The notes under the pieces were generated by a model, which did no database searches, was not told the DNA's origin, and saw only the letters and a program-made list of their open reading frames with translations. A stretch of 64,000 nt of DNA from Ranitomeya imitator (lineage: Eukaryota), in the NCBI RefSeq assembly GCF_032444005.1, contig NC_091284.1:835140001-835204000 (forward strand), written 5' to 3'. A program made the translations under genes and the position numbers. Of this stretch, positions 26,723 to 61,942 are shown in pieces. Positions within the stretch are counted from its first letter, which is position 1. Every line of letters starts with the position of its first letter.

Positions 26723-26917
<195 letters not shown>

Positions 26918-27186: not shown

Positions 27187-29838
<2,652 letters not shown>

Positions 29839-29844
29839 CATTAG

Positions 29845-30364
29845 GTACATTCGCTGATGACCTCAGGTTAGCATCCTCAATAATCAGAACCTCCCACTCC
29901 CGTCTCCAAGACTTTACACGTGCTGCGCCGATTCTTTGGAATGCACTACCTAGGATAATACGATTAATCCCCAATCCCCACAGTTTTAAGCGTGCCCTAA
30001 AAACTCATTTGTTCAGACTGGCCTACCGCCTCAATGCATTAACCTAACGATCCCTGTGTGGCCTATATTAAAAAAAAAAAAAAATTAATTAACTGGTTCA
30101 TGCAGCTTTACATGAACACCTGAGCCTTACACTATGGCCGGTCCGAATAACTATAGCAATTGTTACCATCCACCTCTCGTGTCTCCCCTTTTCCTCATAG
30201 TTTGTAAGCTTACGAGCAGCAGGGCCCTCACTCCTCCTGGTATCTGTTTTGAACTGTATTTCTGTTATGCTGTAATGTCTATTGTATGTACAAGTCCCCT
30301 CTATAATTTGTAAAGCGCTGCGGAATATGTTGGCGCTATATAAATAAAAATTATTATTATTATT
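29845..30364 (+). mobile_element. L2/CR1-clade LINE 3' fragment (ORF2 end, 3' UTR, tail)
   Basis: ORF2 C-terminal residues (SRLQDFTRAAPILWNALP...FKRALKTHLFRLAY) followed by TGTAAAGCGCTGCGGAATATGTTGGCGCTATATAAATAAAAA(TTA)n. Confidence 0.85.
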
Positions 30365-30380
30365 CTTGCTCTTTTCTCAC

Positions 30381-35858: not shown

Positions 35859-36079
35859 CTGCAGGCGGGGCGCGGAACAGAACGCGGAGCCGTCAGTGGC
35901 GGCATCAACCATACCTCTGCCCCAATGTGCCATCACAGATGTCCCCACTGCCCCGATCGGAACCCTCCTTACTAGATAATTTGTGAGAATAAGAATCGGA
36001 ACAGAGTTTGGTCCCAACTTAGCAATAATCACGACAACTAGTGTGATTCGGCCGCACAGAATAAATCAATACATCTCAC

Positions 36080-36276
36080 CGTGTCGTCGTCAAACCCGGC
36101 CAGTCGGATCACCTTCTCGGCCACCGCAGCTTTCCCGGGGTTGGCATCCACAGTGTAGAGTCTAGCGCCCAGGGGCAGCGCCTGCGCCATTATTATGGTG
36201 GCGTATCCGCACTGAGTGCCCAGCTCCAGAACATTGAGCGGCGCGTTCTCATAAATCAGCCGGTCCAGGACCTTCC
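36080..36276 (-). CDS. TOMT: Transmembrane O-methyltransferase, coding exon 2 (SAM-binding motif)
   Basis: cag|(G)[65 protein letters not shown]|gtgaga; 197 nt, not in the supplied ORF track. Confidence 0.95.
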
Positions 36277-36381
36277 CTGAAAAGAAACATCCAGACCCAA
36301 AAGTGACAACTCACGAGGAAGGACCCCATAAGGTTGAAGAATGGACATTTCTCAGTCCAGGGGGCTCGTTGTAAGTTTTAC

Positions 36382-36643
36382 CTTTCTGGGGCCCGATGTT
36401 ACTTAGATATTCGCAGTGATAGCAATATTGGTCAAATGTGTTGAGCACGTGCTGGGGGTCTCCAGGGATGGCATGGGTGATAACATACTGAAAGGCCCTC
36501 TCCTCCCGGGGGATACCGGTGAGATAGTCCTGAATACGGCGCACTATGACGGCACGATAGAAGAGCAGAAAGTAATGACGGTAGCGGATGATCACGGTGA
36601 TAACGAAGGGGATGAAGGCCAGAGCAATGGCGGGAGACACCAT
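36382..36643 (-). CDS. TOMT: Transmembrane O-methyltransferase, coding exon 1 (N-terminal membrane anchor)
   Basis: [88 protein letters not shown]|gtaaaa; [14 protein letters not shown] is TOMT-specific. Join = 783 nt, 260 aa. Confidence 0.95.
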
Positions 36644-36709
36644 GGTCCAACCTGCACAACAGAAGACAGGATGGTGTGAAAACTAATCATAATCCTCCTT
36701 CACCAGAGA

Positions 36710-37650
36710 AATATCACAACTACTTTAATACTGACCCTCTATGTACAAGAATATAACTACTATAATACTGCCCCCTATATACAAGAATATAACTACTATA
36801 ATACTGCTCCTATGTACAAGAATATAACTACTATAATACGGACCCTCTATGTACAAGAATATAACTACTATAATACTGCCCCCTATATACAAGAATATAA
36901 CTACCATAATACTGCCCCTCTATGTACAAGAATATAACTACTATAATACTGCTCCTATATACAAGAATATAACTACTATAATACTGCCCCTATGTACAAG
37001 AATATAACTACTATAATACTGCTCCCTATGTGCAAGAATATAGCTACTATAATACTGCTCCCTATGTACAAGAATATAACTACTATAATACTGCCCCTAT
37101 GTACAAGAATATAACTACTATAATACTGCTCCCTATGTGCAAGAATATAGCTACTATAATACTGCTCCCTATGTACAAGAATATAACTACTATAATACTG
37201 ACCCTCTATGTACAAGAATATAACTACTATAATACTGCCCCCTATATACAAGAATATAACTACCATAATACTGCTCCTATGTACAAGAATATAACTACTA
37301 TAATACTGCTCCTATGTACAAGAATATATCTACTATAATACTGCTCCTATGTACAAGAATATAACTACTATAATACTGCTCCTATGTACAAGAATATAAC
37401 TACTATAATACTGCTCCTATGTACAAGAATATAACTACTATAATACTGCTCCTATGTACAAGAATATAACTACTATAATACTGCCCCCATGTACAAGAAT
37501 ATAACTACTATAATACTGCCCCCTATGTACAAGAATATAACTACTATAATACTGCTCCTATGTACAAGAATATAACTACTATAATACTGCTCCTATGTAC
37601 AAGAATATAACTACTATAATACTGCTCCTATGTACAAGAATATAACTACA
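36710..37650 (-). repeat. 35-bp AT-rich minisatellite, same family as 27506-29838, opposite orientation
   Basis: TATGTACAAGAATATAACTACTATAATACTGCTCC units. Confidence 0.95.
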
Positions 37651-37679
37651 ATATTCTACTTCGTGATAATGTGTGCAAC

Positions 37680-37735
37680 CTGTATAGCGCTGCGGAATAT
37701 GTTAGCGCTATATAAAAATAAAGGTTATTATTATG
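37680..37735 (+). mobile_element. Ultra-short L2 LINE 3' tail
   Basis: TGTATAGCGCTGCGGAATATGTTAGCGCTATATAAAAATAAAGGTTATTATTAT. Confidence 0.7.
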
Positions 37736-38092
37736 TTGAGAATCAGTTGTACTTCTGTCACTTTATGACCTTTTTCTGTGTATTTCTTATATTTGCCCAT
37801 TTTCCTGCGTGAAACATGTCGGAATAGATGTGTATTATTGCATCGTTATCGTTACCTTGTTCGGTGTCTGGCAGTTTCTTCTCTCTTGTGTTCCTCTGAT
37901 CTGCGTTGTTTGTCTTCTATTCTCCATTATTAATGAGTGGGTGCAGCCAGTTAGGGGACAACACACGAGAGGCATTACTCAGGTTGCAAAGGTGCCAGGT
38001 GTTATGGGGTGAAGATACAGACCGCTCACTATCTGCTCTACCCAGTTATAATATTCAGTCTTATATATTAATGTTTACTGATAATAGCGAGA

Positions 38093-41949: not shown

Positions 41950-43554
41950 CAGTGGGGCAAAAAAGTATTTAGTCAGTCAGCAATAGTGCAAGTTCCACCA
42001 CTTAAAAAGATGAGAGGCGTCTGTAATTTACATCATAGGTAGACCTCAACTATGGGAGACAAACTGAGAAAAAAAACCCCAGAAAATCACATTGTCTGTT
42101 TTTTTAACAATTTATTTGCATATTATGGTGGAAAATAAGTATTTGGTCAGAAACAAACAATCAAGATTTCTGGCTCTCACAGACCTGTAACTTCTTCTTT
42201 AAGAGTCTCCTCTTTCCTCCACTCATTACCTGTAGTAATGGCTCCTGTTTAAACTTGTTATCAGTATAAAAAGACACCTGTGCACACCCTCAAACAGTCT
42301 GACTCCAAACTCCACTATGGTGAAGACCAAAGAGCTGTCAAAGGACACCAGAAACAAAATTGTAGCCCTGCACCAGGCTGGGAAGACTGAATCTGCAATA
42401 CCCAACCAGCTTGGAGTGAAGAAATCAACAGTGGGAGCAATAATTAGAAAATGGAAGACATACAAGACCACTGATAATCTCCCTCAATCTGGGGCTCCAC
42501 GCAAAATCCCACCCCGTGGGGTCAGAATGATCACAAGAACGGTGAGCAAAAATCCCAGAACCACGCGGGGGGACCTAGTGAATGAACTGCAGAGAGCTGG
42601 GACCAATGTAACAAGGCCTACCATAAGTAACACACTATGCCACCATGGACTTAGATCCTGCAGTGCCAGACGTGTCCCACTGCTTAAGCCAGTACATGTC
42701 CGGGCCAGTCTGAAGTTTGCTAGAGAGCATTTGGATGATCCAGAGGAGTTTTGGGAGAATGTCCTATGGTCTGATGAAACCAAACTGGAACTGTTTGGTA
42801 GAAACACAACTTGTCGTGTTTGGAGGAAAAAGAATACTGAGTTGCATCCATCAAACACCATACCTACTGTAAAGCATGGTGGTGGAAACATCATGCTTTG
42901 GGGCTGTTTCTCTGCAAAGGGGCCAGGACGACTGATCCGGGTACATGAAAGAATGAATTGGGCCATGCAACGTGAGATTTTGAGTGCAAACCTCCTTCCA
43001 TCAGCAAGGGCATTGAAGATGAAACGTGGCTGGGTCTTTCAACATGACAATGATCCAAAGCACACCGCCAGGGCAACGAAGGAGTGGCTTCGTAAGAAGC
43101 ATTTCAAGGTCCTGGAGTGGCCTAGCCAGTCTCCAGATCTCAACCCTATAGAAAACATTTGGAGGGAGTTGAAAGTCCGTGTTGCCAAGCGAAAAGCCAA
43201 AAACATCACTGCTCTAGAGGAGATCTGCATGGAGGAATGGGCCAACATACCAACAACAGTGTGTGGCAACCTTGTGAAGACTTACAGAAAACGTTTGACC
43301 TCTGTCATTGCCAACAAAGGATATATTACAAAGTATTGAGATGAAATTTTGCTTCTGACCAAATACTTATTTTCCACCATAATATGCAAATAAAATGTTA
43401 AAAAAACAGACAATGTGATTTTCTGGATTTTTTTTCTCAGTTTGTCTCCCATAGTTGAGGTCTACCTGTGATGTAAATTACAGACGCCTCTCATCTTTTT
43501 AAGTGGTGGAACTTGCACTATTGCTGACTGACTAAATACTTTTTTGCCCCACTG
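41950..43554 (+). mobile_element. Tc1/mariner DD34E DNA transposon, full length (1605 bp), same family as 1021-2630
   Basis: TA|CAGTGGGGCAAAAAAG ... CTTTTTTGCCCCACTG|TA; TIRs about 205-210 bp. Confidence 0.97.
42317..43339 (+). CDS. Tc1 transposase, uninterrupted 340-aa ORF
   Basis: Paired-like HTH N-terminus; [13 protein letters not shown] and NPIEN with exactly 34 residues between the second D and E. Confidence 0.93.
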
Positions 43555-44050: not shown

Positions 44051-45576
44051 CACTGCTCAAAAAAACTAAAAGGAACTCTAAAGCAACAGAATATAACTCC
44101 AAGTAAATCAAACTTCTGTGAAACCAAACTGTCCACTTAGGAAGCAACACTGATTGACAATCAATTTCACATGCTGTTGTGCAAATGGAATAGATGGAAA
44201 TTATTGTCAATTATCAAGACCCCCTCAATAAAGGAGCGGTTCTGCAGGTGGGGACCACAGTCCACATCTCAGTACCAATGCTTTCTGGCTGATGTTTTGG
44301 TCACTTTTGAATGTTGGTTGTGCTTTCACACTCGTGGTAGTATGAGACGGACTCTACAACCCGCACAAGTGGCTCAGGTAGTGCAGCTCATCTAGGATGG
44401 CATATCAATGCGAGCTGTGGCAAGGATTGCTGTGTCTGTCAGTATAGTGTCCAGAGGCTCTACCAGGAGACAGACCAGTACACCAGGAGACGTAGAGGGG
44501 GCCATAGGAGGGCAACAACCCAGCAGCAGGACCGCTACCTCAGCCTTTGTGCAAGGAAGAACAGGAGGAGCACTGCCAGAGCCCTGCAAAATGACCTCCA
44601 GCAGGACACAAATGTGCATGTGTCTGCACAAACGGTTAAAAACGACTCCATGAGGATGGTCTGAGTGCCCGACGTTCACAGATGGGGGTTGTGCTCACTG
44701 CCCAACACCGTGCAGGACACTTGGCATTTGCCACAGAACACCAGGATTGGCAAATTCACCACTGGTGCCCTGTGCTCTTCACAGATGAAAGCAGGTTCAC
44801 ACTTGAGCACATGTGACAGAGTCTGGAGACGCCGTGGAGAGCGATCTGCTGCCTGCAACATCCTTCAGCATGACCGGTTAGGCAGTGGGTCAGTAATGGT
44901 GTGGGGTGGCATTTCTTTGGAGGGCCGCACAGCCCTCCATGTGCTCGCCAGAGGTAGCCTGACTGCCATTAGGTACCGAGATGAGATCCTCAGACCCCTT
45001 GTGAGACCATATGCTGGTGCGGTTGGCCCTGGGTTCCTCCTAATGCAGGACAATGCCAGACCTCATGTGGCTGGAGTGTGTCAGCAGTTCCTGCAAGATG
45101 AAGGCATTGAAGCTATGGACTGGCCGCCCGTTCCACAGACCTGAATCCGATTGAGCACATCTGGGACATCATGTCTCGCTCCATCCACCAATGTCACGTT
45201 GCACTACAGACTGTCCAGGAGTTGGCGGATGCTTTAGTCCAGGTCTGGGAGGAGATCCCTCAGGAGACCATCTGCCGCCTCATCAGGAGCATGCCCAGGC
45301 GTTGTAGGGAGGTCATACAGGCACGTGGAGGCCACACACACTACTGAGCATCATTTCTTGTCATGAGGCATTTCCTCTGAAGTTGGATCAACCTGTAACT
45401 TCATTTTCCACTTTGATTTTGAGCATCATTCCAACTTCAGACATCCGTGGGATATTAGTTGTGATTTACATTGATCATTTTTAGGTTTTATTGTGCTCAA
45501 CACATTTCACTATGTAATGAATAAAGATTTACAACTGGAATATTTCATTCAGTGATATCTAGGATGTGGGATTGTG
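44051..45576 (+). mobile_element. Decayed Tc1-like transposon of a second family; right TIR largely deleted
   Basis: TA|CACTGCTCAAAAAAA left end; ends ...AGGATGTGGGATTGTG|TA with most of the right TIR missing. Confidence 0.85.
44342..45347 (+). pseudogene. Tc1-like transposase pseudogene (stops and frameshifts)
   Basis: [17 protein letters not shown], ...VMVWGGIS..., MQDNARPH, shifted DLNPIEHIW, ending ARGGHTHY*. Confidence 0.88.
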
Positions 45577-46405
45577 TATAGTAAGTCTGGAAATTAGGAA
45601 AGGGTTAAGAAAATGTCAGTAAAGAAAACTGATACATTGTTTAATACCAGACACAGAACTTGAGGGGGGCTGAGCATGAGATAATGACCCCCAAAAATGA
45701 TATTTCCATGTTATGCCCCGCCCTTTTGGCACTTAGAGGTGAAGAATTTGTTAATTAAACTGTTCATGCAGTGTTAGAAAACGTATCCCAAGTTACACAA
45801 GTACATCAGAGATTTTGGATGGGAGGGGTCTGGGAGCTGAGACCCCCCAGCAATCGAAAAAGCAAATGATCAGAAGCTTTCAGCGGAGGTCTGCTCTCCC
45901 CCGAAACCTGAGGAGTAAGTGGAAATAAAAGGAGTTTTCAGCCCCTGACGATCATTTCTGCTCATTTATTTCATTGATCGCTAGGGGTCTCGCCTCCCAG
46001 ACCCCCAACAACTGAAACCTGGAAAATATAGCACCTCAGAAGTGCAGACGGCAGCAGGGACCCGTGGAGCGAAAGGGGCTGACCAATGTTACAGGAACAT
46101 GGCTGATTTCTTCTATAAACAGCGCCACCCAAGTCCACAGGTTGTGTGTGGTATAGCAGCTCAGCTGCACTGAGGTGAGTGGTCAGCGGTGACAACCTGT
46201 GGCCAGGAGGAGCGGCGTACTGGAGGAAGCAGCCATGGGTTTTGGTTTTCCACCATATTCTGGACTATGTTGTCGGATCCTTGGGAAACGAACAAAAGCA
46301 GCTTCCTTCTGGGCATCGAAGAGTCGCACGGTGGAGCCCCGGGCAGCCATAAGGGCCACGTCTAGTGCTCCGGTGGCCGCCGTCACTCCGAGGACTCCTG
46401 ATCCT

Positions 46406-49400
46406 TAATAACAGGATCCGCGGAGATTACTGTACTTGTCTTTATTATGTACACCCCTCCTCACATGTACAGCGCCATGGAATAAATGGCGCTATAATAA
46501 TAATAACAGATGGAGAACACAAGGCGGCGGCTTTATCCGCGGAGATTACTGTACCTGTTTATTATGTATACCCCTCCTCACATGTACAGCGCCATGGAAT
46601 AAATGGCGCTATAATAACAGATGGAGAACACAAGGCGGCGGCTTTATCCGCGGAGATTACTGTACTTGTCTTTATTATGTACACCCCTCCTCACATGTAC
46701 CGCGCCATGGAATAAATGGCGCTATAATAATAATAACAGATGGAGAACACAAGGCGGCGGCTTTATCCGCGGAGATTACTGTACCTGTTTATTATGTATA
46801 CCCCTCCTCACATGTACAGCGCCATGGAATAAATGGCGCTATAATAACAGATGGAGAACACAAGGCGGCGGCTTTATCCGCGGAGATTACTGTACCTGTT
46901 TATTATGTACACCCCTCCTCACATGTACAGCGCCATGGAATAAATGGCGCTATAATAATAATAACAGATGGAGAACACAAGGCGGCGGCTTCATCCGCGG
47001 AGATTACTGTACTTGTCTTTATTATGTACACCCCTCCTCACATGTACCGCGCCATGGAATAAATGGCGCTATAATAATAATAACAGATGGAGAACACAAG
47101 GCGGCGGCTTCATCCGCGGAGATTACTGTACCTGTTTATTATGTATACCCCTCCTCATATGTACAGCGCCATGGAATAAATGGCGCTATAATAATAACAG
47201 ATGGAGAACACAAGGCGGCGGCTTTATCCGCGGAGATTACTGTACCTGTTTATTATGTATACCCCTCCTCACATGTACAGCGCCATGGAATAAATGGCGC
47301 TATAATAATAACAGATGGAGAACACAAGGTGGCGGCTTCATCCGCGGCGATTACTGTACCTGTTTATTATGTACACCCCTCCTCACATGTACAGCGCCAT
47401 GGAATAAATGGCGCTATAATAATAATAACAGATGGAGAACACAAGGCGGCGGCTTCATCCGCGGAGATTACTGTACCTGTCTATTATGTACACCCCTCCT
47501 CACATGTACAGCGCCATGGAATAAATGGCGCTATAATAATAATAACAGATGGAGAACACAAGGCGGCGGCTTCATCCGCGGAGATTACTGTACCTGTTTA
47601 TTATGTACACCCCTCCTCACATGTACAGCGCCATGGAATAAATGGCGCTATAATAATAATAACAGATGGAGAACACAAGGCGGCGGCTTCATCCGCGGAG
47701 ATTACTGCACTTGTCTTTATTATGTATACCCCTCCTCACATGTACAGCGCCATGGAATAAATGGCGCTATAATAATAACAGATGGAGAACACAAGGCGGC
47801 GGCTTCATCCGCGGAGATTACTGTACCTGTCTATTATGTATACCCCTCCTCACATGTACAGCGCCATGGAATAAATGGCGCTATAATAATAATAACAGAT
47901 GGAGAACACAAGGCGGCGGCTTTATCCGCGGAGATTACTGTACTTGTCTTTATTATGTATACCCCTCCTCACATGTACAGCGCCATGGAATAAATGGCGC
48001 TATAATAATAACAGATGGAGAACACAAGGCGGCGGCTTTATCCGCGGAGATTACTGTACTTGTCTTTATTATGTACACCCCTCCTCACATGTACAGCGCC
48101 ATGGAATAAATGGCGCTATAATAATAACAGATGGAGAACACAAGGTGGCGGCTTCATCCGCGGAGATTACTGTACCTGTCTATTATGTATACCCCTCCTC
48201 ACATGTACAGCGCCATGGAATAAATGGCGCTATAATAATAACAGATGGAGAACACAAGGTGGCGGCTTCATCCGCGGCGATTACTGTACCTGTCTATTAT
48301 GTACACCCCTCCTCACATGTACAGCGCCATGGAATAAATGGCGCTATAATAATAACAGATGGAGAACACAAGGTGGCGGCTTTATCCGCGGAGATTACTG
48401 TACTTGTCTTTATTATGTACACCCCTCCTCACATGTACCGCGCCATGGAATAAATGGCGCTATAATAATAACAGATGGAGAACACAAGGCGGCGGCTTCA
48501 TCCGCGGAGATTACTGTACCTGTCTATCATGTACACCCCTCCTCACATGTACAGCGCCATGGAATAAATGGCGCTATAATAATAATAACAGATGGAGAAC
48601 ACAAGGCGGCGGCTTCATCCGCGGAGATTACTGTACCTGTCTATTATGTACACCCCTCCTCACATGTACAGCGCCATGGAATAAATGGCGCTATAATAAT
48701 AACAGATGGAGAACACAAGGCGGCGGCTTCATCCGCGGAGATTACTGTACCTGTCTATCATGTACACCCCTCCTCACATGTACAGCGCCATGGAATAAAT
48801 GGCGCTATAATAATAATAACAGATGGAGAACACAAGGCGGCGGCTTCATCCGCGGAGATTACTGTACTTGTCTTTATTATGTATACCCCTCCTCACATGT
48901 ACAGCGCCATGGAATAAATGGCGCTATAATAACAGATGGAGAACACAAGGCGGCGGCTTCATCCGTGGAGATTACTGTACCTGTCTTTATTATGTATACC
49001 CCTCCTCACATGTACAGCGCCATGGAATAAATGGCGCTATAATAACAGATGGAGAACACAAGGCGGCGGCTTCATCCGCGGAGATTACTGTGCTTGTCTA
49101 TCATGTACACCCCTCCTCACATGTACAGCGCCATGGAATAAATGGCGCTATAATAATAACAGATGGAGAACACAAGGCGGCGGCTTCATCCGCGGAGATT
49201 ACTGTACCTATCATGTACACCCCTCCTCACATGTACAGCGCCATGGAATAAATGGCGCTATAATAACAGATGGAGAACACAAGGTGGCGGCTTCATCCGC
49301 GGAGATTACTGTGCTTGTCTTTATTATGTACACCCCTCCTCACATGTACAGCGCCATGGAATAAATGGCGCTATAATAATAATAACAGATGGAGAACACA

Positions 49401-49545
49401 AGGTGGCGGCTTCATCCGCGGAGATTACTGTACCTGTCTATTATGTACACCCCTCCTCACATGTACAGCGCCATGGAATAAATGGCGCTATAATAATAAT
49501 AACAGATGGAGAACACAAGGTGGCGGCTTTATCCGCGGAGATTAC
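46406..49545 (+). repeat. About 110-119-bp satellite, about 27 copies, each carrying an L2 3' stem-loop and (TAA)n tail
   Basis: Unit CCGCGGAGATTACTGTACTTGTCTTTATTATGTACACCCCTCCTCACATGTACAGCGCCATGGAATAAATGGCGCTA(TAA)nCAGATGGAGAACACAAGGCGGCGGCTT(C/T)AT. Confidence 0.95.
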
Positions 49546-50309
49546 ACCCACAGGACGCTAGGGGCGCTAAGGTTAGCGTTCTGTGACCAGAGTAGGGTGG
49601 GGCTGGAATCATCCATAAAGTCACATGTTGCGACCCGTTTTGCACTTCTATTTGGGGACGGGGGTTAATTTCGGGAAGCTGAAGGGGCCAATGCGTCCCA
49701 AAGGGCGCGATCCTGTTTTGGAAATATATGTAAGACCCCCTCCTCCGCCGATCACTGGCCCAGTGTTGTTGTCTGGGGCGAGCAGCGGTGACATCACAAG
49801 TGGCGTCTGTTCAGCCAAACATCTGCTCCAAATTAATATCCCAAATATAAGAGGGGTGAGGTGTGGGGGAGGGGCGGCAGCCGAAGGAACCAATGTAATA
49901 TGGAAAGGAGGGGAAGTTTAATAAGCCCCAGGAGCCACTCCGCCCGGGCCGGGACCTCCAGCCGAGCGCCCCCCAACCCAAAAAATATGGAATATTAACC
50001 TCAAACTGGAGACAAGGCGTTACCTTGTATCACACAGCAAGAAAGGGGGCACTACCAGGACTGGACTTAACCCATGTAGTGCCAGGGTGTCAGCACACCA
50101 CTGGCCGGTGACATTCACATTGTTTCTATGGTCCCTGGATGACCCTGAAAAAACACAGCAAGATGGATTCAATCCAGGGAACGTTCTAGAAATCTCCTGC
50201 CATTGAAAATAATAAGAAATGGTTACTAATCTTCTAGTATAACAAAGAAATGAGGTTTAAAGGTGAGAAAAGAGCAGAGTCCAAACTGCCCAACACTTGT
50301 GTCAGCGGA

Positions 50310-51800
50310 GTCCTAACCACCCGGGTCAGAGGAGCTCAGACCACCCGGCACCAAGGAAATAGGAGCCCTGTCCACCCAGAACCTGGGACAGAGGAAGCCC
50401 AGACCACCCGGGACCAAGAACAGAGGAGCCCTGACCACCTGTCACCCAGGAAGGAAGAGTCCTGACCACGTGGGTTGGAGGAGCCCTGACCACCTCATAC
50501 CAGGGACGGAGGAGCCCAGACCACCAGGCACTCGGGACGGAGGAAGCCCAGACCACCAGGCACCCGGGACAGAGGAGCCCAGACCACCAGGCATCCGGGA
50601 CGATGGAAGCCCCGACCACCAGGCACCCGGGACAGAGGAAGCCCAGACCACCAGGCACCCGGGACAGAGGAGCCCAGACCACCAGGCATCCGGGACGATG
50701 GAAGCCCCGACCACCAGGCACCCGGGACAGAGGAAGCCCAGACCACCAGGCACCCGGGACAGAGGAAGCCCAGACCACCCGGGACCAAGGACAGAGGAGC
50801 CCTGACCACCTGTCACCCAGGAAGGAAAAGTTCTGACCACGTGGGTTGGAGGAGCCCTGACCTCTTCGCACCAGGGATGGAGGAGCCCAGACCACCAGGC
50901 ACCCGGGACAGAGGAAGCCCAGACCACCCGGCACCAATGACAGAGGAGCCCCGTCCACCCAGAACCTGGGACAGAGGAAGCCCAGACCACCCGGGACCAA
51001 GGACAGAGGAGCCCTGACCACCTGTTACCCAGGAAGGAAGAGTCCTGACCACGTGGGTTGGAGGAGCCCTGACCTCTTCGCACCAGGGATGGAGGAGCCA
51101 AGACCACCAGGCACCCGGGACGGAGGAAGCCCGGACCACCAGGCACCCGGGACGAAGGAAGCCTAGACCACCAGGCACCCGGGACGGAGGAAGCCCAGGC
51201 CACCAGACACCCGGGACAGAGGAAGCCCAGGCCACCAGACACCCGGGACAGAGGAAGCCCAGACCACCAGGAACTTGGGACAGGGGAAGTCCAGACCACC
51301 AGGAACCCGGGACAGGGGAAGTCCAGACCACCAGGCACCCGGGACGGAGGAAGCCCAGACCACCAGGCACCCGGGACGGAGGAAACCCAAACAACCAGGC
51401 ACCCGGGAAGGAGGAAGCCCAGACCACCAGACACCCGGGACAGAGGAAGCCCAGGCCACCAGACACCCGGGACAGAGGAAGCCCAGGCCACCAGACACCC
51501 GGGACAGAGGAAGCCCAGACCACCAGGCACCCGGGACGGAGGAGCCCAGACCACCATGAACCCGGGACGGAGGAGCCCTGAACCACCAGGCACCCGACCA
51601 TCCTGCACCCTGAGTGGAGTAGTCCTGACCTGGGACAGAGGTTGTCCTGACTATCTGGCACCCAGGACAGAATATCCCTGACCACACAGCACCCAACAGC
51701 TATGAGCAGTGACGACAGAGAATTCCTGACTACCAAACACCCAGGAGTCCTGACCACCCTGAACCAGGGACAGAACTGCCATGACCACCCTGGATGGAGG
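50310..51800 (+). repeat. About 29-32-bp GC-rich minisatellite with higher-order blocks (CCAGACCACCAGGCACCCGGGACAGAGGAAGC)
   Basis: Periodic core; the CAGGAAGGAA..CTGACCACGTGGGTTGGAGGAGCCCTGACC block recurs near 50446, 50817 and 51029. Confidence 0.9.
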
Positions 51801-52289
51801 AGCTCTGACCACTGGGCCCCCGGGATGGAGGAGCAGTGCGAATCTCTCTTCTGTTCTGGACTAACAGCTCTCCGCTACACTGATCCATTGTAACAAACCC
51901 TCGCTGTGGTATCTCTTAGGACCAGGGGTGTTCAGGCTGTGGATGTAAATAATGTTACCATTCCCTGACAGTGAGCAGGTGAGGTGTATAACCAGGATGT
52001 CGTATGTAAACCTGGAGACGCTCTATTCCAGGGGCCACGGACCCCACGCAGGAAGGTCCCTGAAGACCAAGAAAGTGCAGGAGACGTCTGGGCGCTGACG
52101 TGAGGTTTATGTGTATACAGAGCACAGCCCCATCATCCCCGATCAGCTGATAATTGTTCCATGTTCATTCCCATATAAATGAATTCCTGGGAGCAGCACT
52201 ACAGCCTGGTTACCATGGATACACTGGATACAATGTAACAAGCGAGGTTGTCAGGCAGAGAGTCTCAAACACTGACATGGGGCAGAGGA

Positions 52290-52615
52290 AGACCGGATGC
52301 GTCTCCTCCGGTACGTGCGGGCCGGACGCGTCTCCTCCGGTACGTAGGGGCCGGACGCGTCTCCTCCGGTACGTAGGGGCCGGACGCGTCTCCTCCGGTA
52401 CGTACGGGCCGGACGCGTCTCCTCCGGTACGTACGGGCCGGACGCGTCTCCTCCGGTACGTAGGGGCCGGTCGCGTCTCCTCCGGTTCGTAGGGGCCGGA
52501 CGCGTCTCCTCCGGTACGTACGGACCGGACGCGTCTTCTCCGGTACGGACGGGCCAGACACGTTTCCTCCGGTACGTACGGACCAGACGCGTCTTCTCCG
52601 GTACGTATGGGCCGG
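52290..52615 (+). repeat. 29-bp CpG-dense minisatellite (GGCCGGACGCGTCTCCTCCGGTACGTA(C/G)G), about 11 copies
   Basis: Period 29 (52321 to 52350). Confidence 0.93.
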
Positions 52616-53416
52616 ACACCACAGAGGCCACTGTCCTCGGAAGCATCTCTCCATGTCAGAATCCCTTTTTCATTTGCAGAGTGCCCCAATACTGCGCCGC
52701 TCACAGGACCTTCTGTACCGTGACTCCAGTAATAGGCTGTAATTTTTGGAAGAACCCGGCAGGAAGTTTTCAGTTCCACTGCAGCGCCCCTGCAGGGAAA
52801 ATGGAGTATGACACAACTGGAGGTCTATGTACAAACAGGGCGGAGTCCTCCAGCGAGTGCCAGTCCCTTATTGGGTATTTATATATTGGTTCTCTAACCT
52901 TTAAGAGTCAGGTCATGAGGCCCCTCCTATAAAGGGAGAAATGTCTCTTAAAGGGACAGACACACATAAATATTGTAAATCTTCATATCCCCCTCCTGCT
53001 TATTTCCATTATTACAAAAAATATAAAATAATTAGCCGTTTAAATAGGCGACTTTTTCCCTAAATAATTCAAACCCTGAACCGATACATTTCCGCAGACC
53101 GCGTGGTGCACAGGCTCCTCCCACAGCAATCGTCTCATCGGTGCCGGAAACATGGGCAGCAAGGAGTGCAAATACTCATCGTGGCCACCGGAGGCAGCGG
53201 CGCTCAGAGACTGAAAAAATATCATTTTTGTTCCGTTTTTCTGCCTCCAGAACTATAAACAGGCTCCTCCCACAATGGCGACACCCACGGCGCCATCCTA
53301 TGGGGAGGAGCTATGATGCCGTGTAGGCGGGGACATTATAATGATCCGGGGTCATGGTCCACCCCCTGCGGACCCTCGTGAGGATGATGATGATGGTGCC
53401 CCCTCCTCCGCTCCGT

Positions 53417-53721
53417 CTAGCACTGCAGCTTCCGCACCGTCCGGGAGAATTTCTTCATTTCCTTTTCGCTCTTCTGCCATTTCCGGACCCAGGAGATGAC
53501 GAGCCGCTCGTCTGCCCGATGCCCCATGACCAGCACTGTGGCCCCCGGCTCCTGCAGCTCCGGGCACACGCAGCTGTCCCCGTCCGTCAGCCACAGGACC
53601 GTCCTCTTCAGCTCCTCCTCCGTCCAGCCCTTGGCCTTATACACCGTGCGGCTCCTCGCCTCCGGGACCACCATAGCGCCCCCCTCCACGGACGACACCG
53701 AGCGCAGCGTCACCTTCATGG
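53417..53721 (-). CDS. sfrp2l: Secreted frizzled-related protein 2-like, coding exon 3 (NTR domain)
   Basis: cag|(A)MKVTLRSVSSVEGGAMVVPEARSRTVYKAKGWTEEELKRTVLWLTDGDSCVCPELQEPGATVLVMGHRADERLVISWVRKWQKSEKEMKKFSRTVRKLQC*; RKLQC* is the SFRP2-type C-terminus. Symbol tentative. Confidence 0.9.
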
Positions 53722-53764
53722 CTGAGGAGGAGAGCAACAAGCAATCACGGGGCGGTAGTGCTGA

Positions 53765-56435
53765 GGATGAGATGCACGGCTCGGCAGTATCACACAGGGT
53801 GGGATGAGATACACGGCTCAGCAGTATCACACAGGGTGGGATTAGATACACGGCTCAGCAGTATCACACAGGAGAGGATTAGATACACGGCTCAGCAGTA
53901 TCACACAGGGTGGGATGAGATACACGGCTCAGAAGTATCACACAGGGTGGGATTAGATACACGGCTCAGCAGTATCACACAGGGTGGGATTAGATACACG
54001 GCTCAGCAGTCAGCATCACACAGGATAGGATGAGATACACGGCTCAGCAGTATCACACAGGGTGGGATTAGATACACGGCTCAGAAGTATCACACAGGGT
54101 GGGATGAGATACACGGCTCAGCAGTATCACACAGGGTGGGATTAGATACACGGCTCAGCAGTATCACACAGGGTGGGATTAGATACACGGCTCAGAAGTA
54201 TCACACAGGGTGGGATGAGATACACGGCTCAGCAGTATCACACAGGATAGGATGAGATACACGGCTCAGCAGTATCACACAGGGTGGGATTAGATACACG
54301 GCTCAGAAGTATCACACAGGGTGGGATGAGATACACGGCTCAGCAGTATCACACAGGGTGGGATTAGATACACGGCTCAGCAGTATCACACAGGGTGGGA
54401 TTAGATACACGGCTCAGAAGTATCACACAGGGTGGGATGAGATACACGGCTCAGCAGTATCACACAGGGTGGGATTAGATACACGTCTCAGCAGTATCAC
54501 ACAGGCTGGGATGAGATACCCGGCTCAGCAGTATCACACAGGGTAGGATTAGATACACGGCTCAGCAGTATCACACAGGATAGGATTAGATACACGGCTC
54601 AGCAGTCAGTATCACACAGTATAGGATTAGATACACGGCTCAGCAGACAGTATCACACAGGAGAGGATTAGATACACGGCTCAGCAGTCAGTATCACACA
54701 GTATAGGATTAGATACACGGCTCAGCAGACAGTATCACACAGGAGAGGATTAGATACACGGCTCAGCAGACAGTATCACACAGGAGAGGATTAGATACAC
54801 GGCTCAGCAGTCAGTATCACACAGTATAGGATTAGATACATGGCTCAGCAGACAGTATCACACAGGAAAGGATTAGATACACGGCTCAGCAGTCAGTATC
54901 ACACAATATAGGATTAGATACACGGCTCAGCAGTCAGTATCACACAGGAGAGGATTAGATACACAGCTCAGCAGTCAGTATCACACAGGAGAGGATTAGA
55001 TACACGGCTCAGCAGTCAGTATCACACAGTATAGGATTAGATACACGGCTCAGCAGTCAGTATCACACAGGAGAGGATTAGATACACAGCTCAGCAGTCA
55101 GTATCACACAGTATAGGATTAGATACATGGCTCAGCAGACAGTATCACACAGTATAGGATTAGATACACGGCTCAGCAGACAGTATCACACAGGAGAGGA
55201 TTAGATGCACGGCTCAGCAGTCAGTATCACACAGGAGAGGATTAGATACACGGCTCAGCAGACAGTATCACACAGTATAGGATTAGATACACGGCTCAGC
55301 AGACAGTATCACACAGGAGAGGATTAGATGCACGGCTCAGCAGTCAGTATCACACAGGAGAGGATTAGATACACGGCTCAGCAGACAGTATCACACAGGA
55401 TACAATTAGATACACGGCTCAGAAGACAGTATCACACAGGAGAGGATTAGATGCACGGCTCAGCAGTCAGTATCACACAGGAGAGGATTAGATACACGGC
55501 TCAGCAGTCAGTATCACACAGGAGAGGATTAGATACACGGCTCAGCAGTCAGTATCACACAGGATAGGATTAGATACACGGCTCAGCAGTCAGTATCACA
55601 CAGGATAGGATTAGATACACGGCTCAGCAGTCAGTATCACACAGGATAGGATTAGATACAGGGCTCAGCAGTCAGTATCACACAGGAGAGGATTAGATAC
55701 ACAGCGCAGCAGTATCACACAGGGTGGGATGAGATACACGGCTCAGCAGTATCACACAGGGTGGGATTAGATACATGGCACAGCAGTATCACACAGGGTG
55801 GGATTAGATACACGGCTCAGCAGTATCACACAGGGTGGGATGAGATACATGGCACAGCAGTATCACACAGGGTGGGATTAGATACACGGCTCAGCAGTCA
55901 GTATCACACAGGAGAGGATTAGATACACGGCTCAGCAGTCAGTATCACACAGGGTGGGATTAGATACACGGCTCAGCAGTATCACACAGGGTGGGATGAG
56001 ATACACGGCTCAGCAGTATCACACAGGGTGGGATGAGATACACGGCTCAGCAGTATCACACAGGGTGGGATGAGATACACGGCTCAGCAGTATCACACAG
56101 GGTGGGATGAGATACACGGTTCAGAAGTATCACACAGGAGAGGATTAGATACACGGCTCAGCAGTATCACACAGGAGAGAATTAGATACACGGCTCAGCA
56201 GTATCACAGGAGAGGATTAGATACATGGCTCAGAAGTATCACACAGGAGAGGATTAGATACACGGCTCAGCAGACAGTATCACACAGGAGAGGACTAGAT
56301 ACACAGCTCAGCAGACAGTATCACACAGGAGAGGATTAGATACACGGCTCAGCTGTATCACACAGGGTGGGATTAGATACATGGATCAGCAGTATCACAC
56401 GGGAGAGGATGAGATACACGGTTCAACAGTATCAT
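53765..56435 (+). repeat. 37/41-bp minisatellite (GATTAGATACACGGCTCAGCAGT[CAGT]ATCACACAGG..) filling sfrp2l intron 2
   Basis: Period 37 (53821 to 53858); 41-bp variant in the centre. Confidence 0.96.
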
Positions 56436-56780
56436 CAGTATTGGGATTAGATACTGTTCATGCATCACACCATTAAACTGTCAGGTGATTGGCCGCTGCC
56501 CCCTCTCGCTCCTCCCTACCACCTCTCAGCCATTCAGCAGAGCGGACTGAAGTCACATGACTCCGCTCTGTACAGCGGGGAGGCGGAGCCTGAGGAGGCG
56601 GTCTCACTCCTCTTGGGCTCCTGTCTGACGCCCTCTGGGTCGGTCTATGTTTATTCCATAGACAAGAACATTTTCAGGATTTGTAAGGAGACTGGAGCGG
56701 TCGGGTCAGAGGATCCCTCTAATATTATTGTCGGGATTCACAGATCCGCAGTTCAATAAACTTTATTTATAACAACTCAC

Positions 56781-56858
56781 CAAAGTCTCGGGAGCAGAAA
56801 TCCTGCAGGAACTCCTTCTCAGTGTCCGCGGGACTGTGACAGGCGGAGCACGGGAACT
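56781..56858 (-). CDS. sfrp2l: Secreted frizzled-related protein 2-like, coding exon 2
   Basis: ttcag|(E)FPCSACHSPADTEKEFLQDFCSRDF G|gtgagt; 78 nt, phase 1-1; CxxC...C matches SFRP exon 2. Not in the ORF track. Confidence 0.9.
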
Positions 56859-56897
56859 CTGAAAGCGGACGGGGGATCATGAAAATGATGGACAGGT

Positions 56898-58962
56898 GCC
56901 AGCCGTGCCACATACCGGCCGTGCCATCCTCACATCCAACCATCTACCGGCCGTGCCATCCTCACATCCAACCATCTACCGGCCGTGCCATCCTCACATC
57001 CAACCATCTACCGGCCGTGCCATCCTCACATCCAACCACCTACCGGCCGTGCCACCCTCACATCCAACCACCTACTGGCCGTGCCACCCTCACATCCTCC
57101 CAGCCACCAACCAGCCGTGCCACATACCGGCCGTGCCACCCTCACATCCAACCACCTACCGGCCGTGCCACCCTCACATCCAACCACCTACCGGCCGTGC
57201 CACCCTCACATCCAACCACCTACTGGCCGTGCCACCCTCACATCCAACCACCTACCGGCCGTGCCACCCTCACATCCTCCCAGCCACCAACCAGCCGTGC
57301 AACATACCGGCCGTGCCACCCTCACATCCAACCACCTACCGGCCGTGCCACCCTCACATCCAACCACCTACCGGCCGTGCCACCCTCACATCCAACCACC
57401 TACCGGCCGTGCCACCCTCACATCCAACCATCTACCGGCCGTGCCACCCTCACATCCAACCACCTACCGGCCGTGCCACCCTCACATCCAACCATCTACC
57501 GGCCGTGCCACCCTCACATCCAACCATCTACCGGCCGTGCCACCCTCACATCCAACCATCTACCGGCCGTGCCACCCTCACATCCAACCATCTACCGGCC
57601 GTGCCACCCTCACATCCAACCACCTACCGGCCGTGCCACCCTCACATCCAACCATCTACCGGCCGTGCCACCCTCACATCCAACCACCTACCGGCCGTGC
57701 CACCCTCACATCCAACCACCTACCAGCCGTGCCACCCTCACATCCAACCACCTACCGGCCGTGCCACCCTCACATCCAACCACCTACCGGCCGTGCCACC
57801 CTCACATCCAACCACCTACCGGCCGTGCCACCCTCACATCCAACCACCTACCGGCCGTGCCACACTCACATTCCCACAGCCACCTACCGGCCATGCCACC
57901 CTCACATCCTCCCAGCTACCTACCGGCCGTGCCACCCTCACATCCTTCCAGCCACCTACCAGCCGTGCCACCCTCACATCCTTCCAGCCACCTACCGGCC
58001 GTGCCACACTCACATTCCCACAGCCACCTACCGGCCGTGCCACACTCACATTCCCACAGCCACCTACCGGCCGTGCCACACTCACATTCCCACAGCCACC
58101 TACCGGCCGTGCCACACTCACATTCCCACAGCCACCTACCGGCCGTGCCACACTCACATCCCCACAGCCACCTACTGGTCGTGCCACCCTCACATCCTCC
58201 CAGCCACCTACCGGCCGTGCCACACTCACATTCCCACAGCCACCTACCGGCCGTGCCACCCTCACATCCTCCCAGCCATCTACCGGTCGTGCCACCCTCA
58301 CATCCTCCCAGCCATCTACCGGTCGTGCCACCCTCACATCCTCCCAGCTACCTACCGGCCGTGCCATGCTCACATCCTCCCATCTACCTACCGGCCGTGC
58401 CACCCTCACATCCTCCCAGCTACCTACCGGCCGTGCCACCCTCACATCCTCCCATCTACCTACCGGTCGTGCCACCCTCACATCCTCCCAGCTATCTACC
58501 GGCCGTGCCACCCTCACATCCTCCCATCTACCTACCGGCCGTGCCACCCTCACATCCTCCCAGCTACCTACCGGCCGTGCCACCCTCACATCCTCCCAGC
58601 CATCTACCGGTCGTGCCACCCTCACATCCTCCCAGCTACCTACCGGCCGTGCCATGCTCACATCCTCCCATCTACCTACCGGCCGTGCCACAGTCACATC
58701 CTCCCAGCTATCTACCGGCCGTGCCACCCTCACATCCTCCCAGCCACCTACCGGCCGTGCCACCCTCACATCCTCCCAGCCACCTACCGGCCGTGCCACG
58801 CTCACAATTCTCCCAGCCACCTACCGGCCATGCCACCCTCACAATTCTCCCAGCCACCTACCGGCCGTGCCACCCTCACATCCTCCCAGCCACCTACCGG
58901 CCGTGCCACGCTCACATCCTCCCAGCCACCTACCGGCCGTGCCACGCTCACATCCCCACGGC
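56898..58962 (+). repeat. 32/35-bp minisatellite (TACCGGCCGTGCCACCCTCACATCCAACCACC / ...CCTCCCAGCCACC) filling sfrp2l intron 1
   Basis: Occupies nearly all of the 2111-bp intron 56859-58969. Confidence 0.96.
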
Positions 58963-58969
58963 CACTTAC

Positions 58970-59468
58970 CTTCCTTTGACACTGGCATCTTGTCCTCCAT
59001 GCCAGCAGGGGGTACACACAGCTCGTTCCCCTCTGGAAACTGGGAGCAGTTAAACATCTCTGGCCATGGAAACCCAAAAGCAGCCATCACGGGTGTGCAG
59101 CCGTCTCGGACCTCCTCACAAAGGGATCGGCAGGGATGAATGGCTTCCTCCAGGTCACTGAGGCACACCGGGGCAAACAGGGAGCACAGGAACTTCTTGG
59201 TGTCTGAATGGCACTGCTTGGTGAGAAGGGGCACCCAGGAGCCCGCCTGCTGCAGAACCTCTTTCATGGTGTCATGTCCTAGCAGGTTGGGCAGGCGCAT
59301 CTCGCTGTAGCCCACCCCATGGCACAGCGTCATACTGCTTGGGACCGGCTTGCAGCTGCTTTTGCGGGTGCTCAACTGGGTGAGAATAAAAGGAAATCCT
59401 GAGGCGGGATGCAGGAGGATGACCACCCCCATCAGGAGCTCGGCGGACAAAAGGGCCCTCATCATCAA
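58970..59468 (-). CDS. sfrp2l: Secreted frizzled-related protein 2-like, coding exon 1 (signal peptide and frizzled CRD)
   Basis: MMRALLSAELLMGVVILLHPASG...MRLPNLLGHDTMKEVLQQAGSWVPLLTKQCHSDTKKFLCSLFAPVCL...FGFPWPEMFNC...VSKE G|gtaagt; 10 CRD cysteines; in-frame TAG upstream of the ATG. Join = 882 nt, 293 aa. Confidence 0.93.
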
Positions 59469-60179: not shown

Positions 60180-61942
60180 TCCTCAGATCCTGTCTAACCT
60201 CATGTCCAAAACCAGCTTCTCCACCATGACAGAAGATCAGCTCTCCACCTTCCTGTCAAGATCACATCTCATCACTTGCACGCTTGACCCGCTCCCGTCC
60301 CACCTCATCCCTTACCTTGCCACGGTCTTCATTCCATCCCTAACGCACCTCTTCAACCTCTCACTCACAACTGGTGTCTTCCCCCTCATCCTTCAAACAT
60401 GTCTCGATCACACCTACCCTCAAAAAGCCCTCCCTCGACCCATCCTCAGTGTCCAGCTATCGCCAGATATCCCTTCTCCTTTATACCTCAAAACTACTGG
60501 AACAGCAGGTCCATCTTGAACTGTCCTCCCACCTCTCCTCCTGATCCCTCTTTGGTTACAATCTGGCTTCCGACCCCATCACTCAACTGAAACTGCCCTA
60601 ACTAAAGTCACCAACGACCTACTAACTGCCAGGAGCAAGCGACACTACTCTGTCCTCCTCCTCCTGGACCTGTCTTCTGCCTTCGACACTGTGGACCACT
60701 CTCTCCTGTTACAGACCCTCTCATCTCTTGGCATCACAGACTTGGCCCTATCCTGGATCTCGTCTTACCTAACAGACCGAACATTCAGTGTCCCCCTCCC
60801 CCACACCACCTCCTCACTTCGCCTCTTGTCTATCGGTGTTCCTCAAGGCTCAGTTCTAAGGCCCCTACTCTTCTCCATCTACACCTTCGGCCTGGGACAG
60901 CTCATAGAAGCCCACGGTATGCAGTACCATCTCTACGCTGATGACACGCAGATCTACCTATCCGGACCTGACCTCTCCTCCTTACTCACCAAAATCCCGC
61001 ACTGTCTGTCTGCTATCTCGGCTTTCTTTTCTGCTCGCTTTCTACAACTGAACATGGACAAAACAGAATTCATCATCTTTCCCCCATCTCACTCTACCCC
61101 TCCACCAGACCTATCCATCAATGTCAATGGCTGCTCACTATCCCCAGTCCCACACGCCCGGTGCCTCGGGGTGATCCTCGACTCTGCCCTCTCTTTCAAG
61201 CCATATATCCAAGCCCTTGCCTCCTGCCGTCTCAAACTCAAAAACATTTCCCGGATCCGCGCATTCCTTGAACAAGAAACTGCAAAAATGCTTAGCTCGC
61301 CCTTATTATCTCCCACCTTGACTACTGTAACCTCCTGCTCTGTGGCCTCCCCTCTAACACTCTCGCACCCCTACAATCTATTCTAAACTCTGCTGCCCGA
61401 CTAATCCACCTGTCCCCCTGCTATTCCCCGGCCTCTCCTCTGCCAAGCCCTTCATTGGCTTTCTATTGCCCAGAGACTCCAGTTCAAAACCCTAACCAAG
61501 ACGTACAAAGCCATCCACAACCTGTCTCCTCCATACATCTGTGACCTCGTCTCCCGGTACTTTCCTGCACGCAACCTCTGATCCTCACAAGACCTCCTTC
61601 TCTACTCCCCTCTTATCTCCTCTTCTCACAATCGTATACAAGATTTCTCTCGCGCATCCCCCCTACTCTGGAACCCTCTACCACAACACATCAGACTCTC
61701 GCCCACCATAGAAACCTTCAAAAAGAACCTGAAGACTCACCTCTTCCGACAAGCCTACAACCTGCAGTGATCCTCAACCTACTGAACTGCCGCACAACTT
61801 GCCCTACCCTCTCCTACTGTATCCTCACCCATCCCCTGTGGACTGTGAGCCCTCGCGGGCAGGGTCCTCCCTCCTTATGTACCTGTGTGCCTTGTTTTAC
61901 TCATGTTTATTGTATTTGTCTATATTTGCCCCCTTTCACATC
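60180..61942 (+). mobile_element. 5'-truncated L2/CR1-clade LINE with frameshifted reverse transcriptase
   Basis: [36 protein letters not shown] and KNISRIR motifs; 3' UTR ends before the terminal stem-loop. Confidence 0.93.

What the first reader, a model, noticed from the sequence alone, without database searches (positions are those of the whole stretch)
46406..49545. Satellite built from about 27 tandem copies of an L2 LINE 3' recognition stem-loop and tail
Seen: each unit has a perfect 8-bp hairpin AGCGCCAT-GGAATAA-ATGGCGCT followed by a variable (TAA)n tract. The segment before it (TGTACTTGTCTTTATTATGTACACCCCTCCTCACAT) resembles the end of the L2 at about 61910-61942, and the hairpin-plus-(TTA/TAA)n layout matches the other L2 tails in this window. 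Established: L2-clade reverse transcriptases recognise a 3' stem-loop plus short-repeat tail (eel UnaL2 model). Inference: one L2 end plus about 45 bp of flank was tandemly amplified. Any plus-strand transcript would carry about 27 RT-recognition signals and about 27 AATAAA hexamers, so it could be an L2-mobilisable satellite, an RT decoy or piRNA source, or a barrier to antisense transcription between sfrp2l and TOMT.
Basis: partly seen in the sequence, partly recalled or inferred. Interest (0 to 1): 0.7.

Follow-up and report, generated by a model that had tools for sequence, protein, structure and literature searches.

The report
Minisatellite grown from an L2 tail
A frog's L2 jumping-gene tail (hairpin plus TAA repeats) and about 40 bases of neighbouring DNA have been copied head-to-tail 27 times between two genes; it is real, but most likely an ordinary by-product of a genome stretch that is more than half tandem repeats.

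Summary
Window 46416-49545 holds 27 head-to-tail units of 107-119 bp, plus a degenerate partial unit from 46406. Each unit has the 23-nt hairpin and 2-4 TAA repeats; the stem is a perfect 8 bp in 24 units and 7 bp in 3.

Unit positions about 9-91 match an abundant dispersed retroposon tail of this frog genome, other tails in the window, and the 3' end of an RT-bearing LINE copy. The other 36-43 bp match nothing else.

The array starts and ends with the non-L2 spacer (28 spacers, 27 L2 parts). This fits unequal exchange between direct repeats flanking one 5'-truncated L2 insertion.

The functional ideas are not supported:
- The hairpin is no better conserved than the spacer.
- No dispersed spacer-bearing copies were seen.
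- 55% of the window is tandem arrays (20 of them).
- Earlier scan notes report other L2-tail minisatellites elsewhere in this genome (unchecked).

sfrp2l and TOMT both lie on the minus strand, so the "antisense barrier" framing does not fit.

Contigs from probable RNA runs cover the array and its right flank, but the strand is unknown. A role as part of an sfrp2l 3' UTR or read-through is an open lead.

Verdict: TE-derived minisatellite, a new member of a known kind, of low interest.

The parts
46406..46430 (+). Degenerate left-edge spacer copy: a 9-nt TAA-CAG match, one G in place of 25 nt, then the 15-nt unit start
   Evidence: read directly from the sequence
46416..49545 (+). Tandem array: 27 units of 107-119 bp plus a terminal 15-nt partial unit
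47932..48011 (+). L2-derived part of an example unit (u14, 47924-48039): pre-hairpin tail segment, hairpin and TAA tract. Homology to dispersed copies starts at unit position 9-16 and ends at the last TAA.
   Evidence: loose ends before 47932/47936/48856/48969 and behind 46506/49502
47979..48001 (+). Hairpin of the example unit: 8-bp stem and 7-nt loop, with AATAAA starting in the loop
48012..48039 (+). Non-L2 spacer of the example unit. It continues into the first 8-15 nt of the next unit and matches nothing else in the window.
49503..49545 (+). Terminal spacer copy. The array ends exactly where the L2 part would begin.
49500..50100 (.). Single-copy right flank. It is covered by contigs of the probable RNA runs X3 (a 900-nt contig that runs on past 50100) and X12. 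Strand unknown.
   Evidence: tables 2 and 8
60520..61383 (+). Reverse-transcriptase fragment of a LINE copy whose 3' end follows
   Evidence: RVT_1, E 1.4e-26
61780..61942 (+). 3' end of that LINE copy. It has the tail core motif and the pre-hairpin segment like the array unit. The copy stops just before the hairpin.
30200..30367 (+). Canonical dispersed L2-type tail: related hairpin, then a TTA run
53417..53851 (-). Last coding exon (NTR domain) of sfrp2l. Its 3' UTR runs towards the array.
36041..36310 (-). TOMT-like O-methyltransferase exon. The N-terminal exon lies at about 36314-36682 on the minus strand.

Best explanation
This is a young, single-locus minisatellite with no demonstrated function.

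A 5'-truncated copy (about 80 bp) of an abundant L2-type retroposon tail (pre-hairpin segment, 8-bp hairpin, TAA repeats) inserted into the spacer between sfrp2l and TOMT. The insertion was flanked by direct repeats of the target, 25-49 bp long. That target is the 'spacer', which begins with TAATAA and ends with ATTAC.

Unequal exchange or replication slippage between those direct repeats, and later between whole units, then multiplied [L2 tail + spacer] to 27 copies. Further exchange shuffled the variants.

Shown: the array, its unit anatomy, the L2-tail homology, the start and end in spacer, the mosaic of variants, and the very repeat-prone surroundings.

Inferred: that the spacer is a target-site duplication, how the array grew, and that it is neutral.
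For: - Array and units.
- L2-tail homology of unit positions about 9-91, and none for the spacer.
- There are 28 spacer copies against 27 L2 parts. The left edge is a spacer copy with a 25-nt deletion. The right edge is a spacer copy that ends exactly at the L2 5' junction.
- TAA microhomology at the 3' junction and ATTAC overlap at the 5' junction fit target-primed reverse transcription starting from 3' repeats (PMC1636434).
- Variant sites show all four combinations (columns 21/37 and 110/119), and identical units recur (u02 = u04, u19 = u21). Identity does not depend on distance between units (0.94-0.95 at lags 1-10). These are signs of repeated unequal exchange.
- The hairpin is not better conserved: 1 of 23 variable columns against 3 of 36 in the spacer (p = 1) and 10 of 77 in all other columns (p = 0.45).
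- 20 tandem arrays cover 55.5% of the 64-kb window.
- In the genomic run X1 the flanks are single-copy (depth 5-8). The spacer-bearing contig that was listed has depth 16, while summed L2-tail contigs reach about 1e5.
- TE-derived tandem arrays, including ones from LINE 3' UTRs, are a known kind (PMC9659126; PMC5932611).
Against: - Single-locus status rests on contig depths, which the tool warns are poor measures, and on a list of loose ends with 147 rows hidden. No whole-genome search was possible.
- A target-site duplication of 25-49 bp is long, and the left copy needs one extra indel.
- Probable RNA runs hold array-specific sequence, so the array is not silent and a role at the RNA level is not excluded.
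- CpG observed/expected is 0.99 in the array against 0.52-0.53 in the flanks. This fits youth, but it could also reflect something else.
Confidence: 0.75

Rival explanations
1. The array serves as, or has been co-opted as, the end of the sfrp2l transcription unit. Minus-strand transcripts run about 4 kb past the stop codon and are cleaved at the AAUAAA hexamers that the antisense L2 tails supply. This would also limit read-through towards the TOMT promoter about 10 kb further on.
For: - sfrp2l and TOMT are both on the minus strand, with the array between the sfrp2l 3' end and the TOMT 5' end.
- On the minus strand there is no AATAAA between the stop codon (53417) and the array, only one ATTAAA at 49917. 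The array then offers 17 AATAAA, the first at 49325.
- Contigs of the probable RNA runs X3 and X12 cover 49500 to about 50400 and array-specific sequence. The left flank is at 2.7 in X3 and 0 in X12, against 67.6 and 7-11 on the right.
Against: - The strand of those contigs is unknown, and the run types are guesses.
- Contig depth is a poor measure.
- Use of a hexamer that happens to be there would not show selection for the array.
- Non-canonical signals upstream could end the mRNA earlier.
Confidence: 0.1
2. The array is an L2-mobilisable satellite, or a decoy for L2 reverse transcriptase. Plus-strand transcripts would be cleaved after each loop AAUAAA. That would release roughly 117-nt RNAs ending in a cognate stem-loop and UAA repeats, which L2 ORF2p binds and may retrotranspose.
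For: - Each unit carries the full module that L2-clade LINEs need: a stem-loop and 3' repeats.
- AATAAA sits in every loop, 10-30 nt before the TAA tract or spacer.
- The source family is very abundant, and earlier scan notes report intact L2 copies in this genome (unchecked).
- Another minisatellite in the window (35-bp units) abuts canonical L2-type tails at two loci. So tail-bearing repeat carriers may exist in this genome.
Against: - No loose end was seen at the start of the spacer, and no dispersed spacer-bearing contig was found. All supported loose ends lie at the borders of the L2 part.
- No plus-strand transcript has been shown.
- The hairpin is not preferentially conserved.
- Reverse transcription starts at a 3'-terminal repeat (PMC1636434), which internal copies do not offer unless the RNA is cleaved.
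Confidence: 0.04
3. The array is a small-RNA (piRNA) source against the L2 family. It would be transcribed antisense to the L2 tails and processed into piRNAs.
For: Probable transcription of the array. If that transcription comes from the sfrp2l side, the RNA would be antisense to 27 L2 tails.
Against: No small-RNA data were available. The array is only 3.1 kb, and it targets only the last 80 nt of the element. The region is full of unrelated arrays.
Confidence: 0.04
4. The array is an assembly artefact, i.e. a mis-assembled or inflated repeat.
For: Long tandem arrays are prone to copy-number errors. One base in the right flank (49696) differs from all three runs laid on it.
Against: Junction-spanning contigs exist on both sides in X1, and on the right side also in X3 and X12, which come from other studies. 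The units carry a structured mosaic of variants.
Confidence: 0.02

Closest known systems
TE-derived minisatellites and satellites, especially those from LINE 3' UTRs (common cetacean satellite from the L1 3' end, chicken HinfI/CR1, Drosophila 18HT from HeT-A; review PMC9659126)
   Same: A fragment of a retrotransposon's 3' non-coding end has become the repeat unit of a head-to-tail array.
   Different: Here there is one 3.1-kb euchromatic locus, and the unit also contains about 40 bp of non-TE target sequence. It is not a high-copy or centromeric satellite.
3' tail of stringent L2-clade LINEs (eel UnaL2, zebrafish ZfL2-1 and ZfL2-2; PMC1636434, PMC4176376)
   Same: A stem-loop directly followed by a short tandem repeat. 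The 5' part of the loop (GGAATA) is shared with the window's canonical tails, while three upper stem positions differ yet pair.
   Different: In the LINE the module sits once, at the RNA 3' end. Here there are 27 internal copies with no ORF. Binding or mobilisation was not tested, and the clade of the partner RT was not determined with these tools.
Satellite seeding by tandem TE dimers (McGurk and Barbash 2018, PMC5932611)
   Same: A TE insertion provides the direct repeats that unequal exchange then expands.
   Different: That model starts from a double insertion of the TE. Here the direct repeats appear to be duplicated target sequence around a single truncated insertion.
SINEs that borrow L2 tails (UnaSINE1, V-SINEs; cited in PMC1636434)
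   Same: A non-coding sequence joined to an L2 recognition tail.
   Different: No dispersed copies of spacer plus tail were found. There is no Pol III promoter-like head, and the copies lie in tandem at one site.

Membership tests
Minisatellite / VNTR | Head-to-tail repeats with a unit of roughly 10-100+ bp, in an array of 0.5-30 kb at one locus | tested here: met
   27 units of 107-119 bp spanning 3.1 kb. The flanks are single-copy in run X1.
Minisatellite / VNTR | Copy number varies between individuals | not testable with these tools
   Only contigs were available, with no long reads from several individuals.
Satellite DNA (high-copy, multi-locus) | Many loci or very long arrays, with a high genomic copy number of the whole unit | tested here: inconclusive
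   The listed spacer-bearing contig has depth 16 against 5-8 for unique flanks. Only the L2 part reaches huge summed depth. No genome-wide search was possible.
TE-derived tandem repeat | The unit contains a recognisable fragment of a dispersed transposable element | tested here: met
   Unit positions about 9-91 match dispersed tails and tails in the window (z 9.5 and 5.1).
L2-clade stringent LINE 3' tail | A stem-loop immediately upstream of the 3' end | tested here: met
   8-bp stem and 7-nt loop in 24 of 27 units, and a 7-bp stem in 3. It is the predicted minimum-energy fold.
L2-clade stringent LINE 3' tail | A short tandem repeat at the very 3' end | tested here: met
   TAA x 2-4 in the units. 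Dispersed copies continue with more TAA or A-rich sequence after the same point.
L2-clade stringent LINE 3' tail | The same tail is carried by an autonomous LINE whose RT belongs to the L2 clade | tested here: inconclusive
   An RVT_1 fragment at 60520-61383 is followed by a tail that matches the unit's pre-hairpin 40 nt. But that copy lacks the hairpin, and the RT clade could not be assigned because no Dfam or Repbase library was available. The likeness to the mammalian L2 3' end is from memory only.
L2-clade stringent LINE 3' tail | Bound by the cognate ORF2p and needed for retrotransposition | not testable with these tools
   This needs a binding or retrotransposition assay like those in PMC4176376.
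Non-autonomous retroposon mobilised by L2 (SINE-like) | Dispersed copies of the whole unit, each ending at the 3' repeat | tested here: not met
   The supported loose ends lie only at the borders of the L2 part and none at the start of the spacer. There is no second copy of the spacer in the window. The test is weak, since 147 loose-end rows were hidden.
piRNA cluster | Dense 24-31-nt small RNAs from gonads | not tested
   No small-RNA run was offered.

The most novel reading that the evidence does not exclude
Plus-strand transcripts of the array are cleaved at the AAUAAA in each hairpin loop. This releases short RNAs that each end in a cognate L2 stem-loop and UAA repeats. The locus would then act as a multi-copy sponge for L2 reverse transcriptase, or as a source of trans-mobilised L2 copies: a host- or parasite-made 'tail factory'.
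Probability: 0.03. Interest if true: 0.7.

Novelty: new member of a known kind. Interest (0 to 1): 0.2.

Why it matters
If neutral, as is most likely, the array matters mainly as a clean worked example of how one truncated LINE insertion with flanking direct repeats can seed a minisatellite. It also adds a data point on how repeat-prone this poison-frog genome is: more than half of this gene-bearing window is tandem arrays.

It would matter more in two cases. First, if sfrp2l transcripts really end in the array, a transposon-derived repeat would be supplying a gene's poly(A) signals. Second, if plus-strand RNA with 27 L2 recognition modules exists, it could interact with active L2 elements.

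Tried and rejected
- Rfam at gathering thresholds over the whole window: no match.
- Exact scan of metagenome contigs for the 23-nt hairpin, hoping for frog contamination that would give dispersed copies: 0 hits.
- Earlier findings searched by sequence: nothing.
- Higher-order repeat. TRF also reports period 230, but identity between units is flat across lags 1-10 (0.94-0.95). Only local dimer duplications are seen, e.g. u01-u02 / u03-u04. The higher-order repeat was rejected.
- Extra conservation of the hairpin: rejected for lack of any signal. Counted per cell, the hairpin looks cleaner (3 of 621, against 17 of 972 in the spacer). But cells are not independent, because variants spread by duplication.
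- A coding reading of the long plus-strand ORFs (up to 379 aa): rejected. They arise because 117 is a multiple of three, and they break wherever unit length changes.
- Repeated self-insertion of a 117-nt retroposon into its own tail: not supported, because no dispersed copies of the spacer were seen.
So the plan to recover RNA contigs and their sample records for the right flank could not be carried out.
- Five literature calls failed on term syntax.

Full report
**What is there.** Tandem Repeats Finder reports one array at 46416-49545 with period 117, 27.1 copies and 94% matches. Splitting on the 15-nt unit start gives 27 units of 107-119 bp and a final 15-nt partial unit. The 23-nt hairpin motif occurs 27 times, all in the array; shuffled sequence gives none. 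Twenty-four hairpins have the perfect 8-bp stem. Three have C at the first stem base. These three units share the long pre-hairpin variant with C at column 37, so the change probably arose once and spread by duplication. The TAA tract has 4, 3 or 2 copies in 12, 10 and 5 units. The hairpin is the predicted fold of the RNA, at -13.6 kcal/mol and z -2.8. Contigs from public runs cross the right junction in three studies and the left junction in one, so the array is real.

**Anatomy of the unit.** The unit has five parts:
- positions 1-8 or 1-15: the end of the spacer;
- about 40 nt of pre-hairpin tail;
- the 23-nt hairpin;
- A(TAA)2-4;
- a 28-nt spacer.

**Evidence that the middle part is a retroposon tail.** Three lines of evidence agree.
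1. Three canonical tails in the window (30302-30367 plus strand, 37674-37739 plus strand, 28201-28136 minus strand) have a related hairpin followed by A-rich sequence and a TTA run. The unit's L2 part aligns to the 30-kb tail over about 75 nt with z 9.5.
2. A reverse-transcriptase fragment at 60520-61383 (RVT_1, E 1.4e-26) is followed at 61780-61942 by a tail with the core motif. Its last 40 nt align to the unit's pre-hairpin segment with z 5.1. That copy stops just before the hairpin.
3. In the genomic run X1, and in a related species (X19), contigs from elsewhere match the unit from position 9-16 to the last TAA at 90% identity or more. Upstream they continue into tail core sequence. Downstream they continue into more TAA or A-rich sequence (tables 7 and 8). 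Summed depth over some L2 parts reaches about 1e5, against 5-8 for unique flanks. So the source family is very abundant.

The spacer matches none of these tails and nothing else in the window.

The 5' part of the loop (GGAATA) is shared between the array type and the canonical type. The three upper stem positions differ on one or both sides and still pair in the array type. This fits a functional stem-loop in the source families.

Calling the family 'L2' rests on three things: the RT linkage, the stem-loop-plus-repeat architecture of L2-clade LINEs (PMC4176376, PMC1636434), and my recollection of the mammalian L2 3' end. It was not tested against a repeat library.

**How the array arose (inference).** The array begins with a degenerate spacer copy at 46406-46430: a 9-nt TAA-CAG match, one G in place of 25 nt, then the 15-nt unit start. 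It ends with a full spacer copy at 49503-49545, which stops exactly where the L2 part would start. So there are 28 spacers and 27 L2 parts.

A plain duplication of [L2 + flank] would give equal numbers of each. The simplest account is one 5'-truncated L2 insertion flanked by direct repeats of the target, 25-49 bp long.
- The target begins with TAATAA, which is microhomology for priming on the UAA repeats.
- It ends with ATTAC, which overlaps the start of the L2 homology.

Unequal exchange between these repeats, and later between units, would then have built the array.

The units carry a mosaic of variants with all four combinations at pairs of sites, and identical units recur. Identity does not fall with distance between units. 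This is as expected from repeated exchange. Mean substitution divergence between units is 2.8%.

**Is the hairpin protected?** No signal was found. Variable columns number 1 of 23 in the hairpin, 3 of 36 in the spacer and 7 of 41 in the pre-hairpin segment. Fisher's test gives p = 1 for hairpin against spacer and p = 0.45 for hairpin against the rest. The test has little power because the array is young.

**Surroundings.** Twenty tandem arrays cover 55.5% of the window. Earlier notes of this scan (unchecked) describe the genome as a poison frog's. They list other minisatellites born from L2 tails or small RNA hairpins elsewhere in the genome. So amplification of whatever lies there seems to be routine in this genome.

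The genes all lie on the minus strand:
- an INPPL1-like SH2 exon at about 12 kb;
- folate-receptor exons at about 27 kb;
- TOMT-like methyltransferase exons at 35.5-36.7 kb;
- sfrp2l, with the Fz exon at 58839-59468 and the NTR exon at 53417-53851.

The array therefore lies downstream of sfrp2l and upstream of TOMT, both in the same orientation. It does not lie between converging or diverging genes.

**Transcription.** All runs offered were Logan contigs, and none is on record as RNA. Runs X3 and X12 come from two different studies. In both, contigs cover the single-copy right flank (49500 to about 50400) at 67.6 and 7-11, while the left flank is at 2.7 and 0. Both runs also hold array-specific sequence that includes the spacer. 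Such uneven coverage of single-copy DNA argues for RNA, but the tool warns that contig depth is a poor measure, and the strand cannot be read.

On the minus strand there is no AATAAA between the sfrp2l stop codon and the array, and only one ATTAAA at 49917. The array then offers 17 AATAAA. A long sfrp2l 3' UTR or read-through that ends in the array is therefore a reasonable lead, and I give it about 10%. If that is right, the RNA carries the tails in antisense, which would not serve L2 recognition.

**Verdict.** The functional readings are unsupported. This is a TE-derived minisatellite: a new member of a well-known kind (PMC9659126, PMC5932611).

**Limits.** There was no repeat library and no whole-genome search. 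Only contigs were available, not reads.

Noticed in passing
window 1-64000: Twenty separate tandem arrays (periods 19-387 bp, up to 200 copies) cover 55.5% of this gene-bearing window.
   Followed up: partly
window 36718-37739 (+) and 27506-29852 (-): The same 35-bp minisatellite occurs at two loci, and each abuts a canonical L2-type tail (hairpin plus TTA run). At 28120-28201 the tail sits in the middle of the array, with 35-bp repeats on both sides. This may be a non-autonomous retroposon that carries an internal minisatellite. That would make it a better candidate for an 'L2-mobilised repeat' than the array under study.
   Followed up: partly
window 49546-53417, minus strand: There is no AATAAA between the sfrp2l stop codon and the array, and only one ATTAAA at 49917. 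Contigs of probable RNA runs cover 49500 to about 50400.
   Followed up: partly
window 49696: The assembly has T, while all three frog runs that cover the place (X1, X3, X12) have C. This is either an allele or an assembly error.
   Followed up: no
window 42317-43339 (+) and 1242-2177 (-): Two near-identical Tc1/mariner-like transposase reading frames. The first is an uninterrupted 340-aa ORF. A third, more diverged Tc1-like fragment lies at 44665-45344.
   Followed up: no
window 11840-12097, 26723-27522, 35538-36682, 53417-59468 (all minus strand): The gene order is INPPL1-like SH2 exon, folate-receptor exons, TOMT-like methyltransferase, then sfrp2l. This agrees with the neighbouring finding that an SFRP2-like gene sits next to TOMT.
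   Followed up: partly
window 45800-46200: The left flank holds a short, highly repeated element (about 46117-46165). Contigs of all four runs break there with loose ends. It looks like a frog MITE fragment.
   Followed up: no
window 46406-49545 against its flanks: CpG observed/expected is 0.99 in the array, against 0.52-0.53 in both flanks.
   Followed up: no
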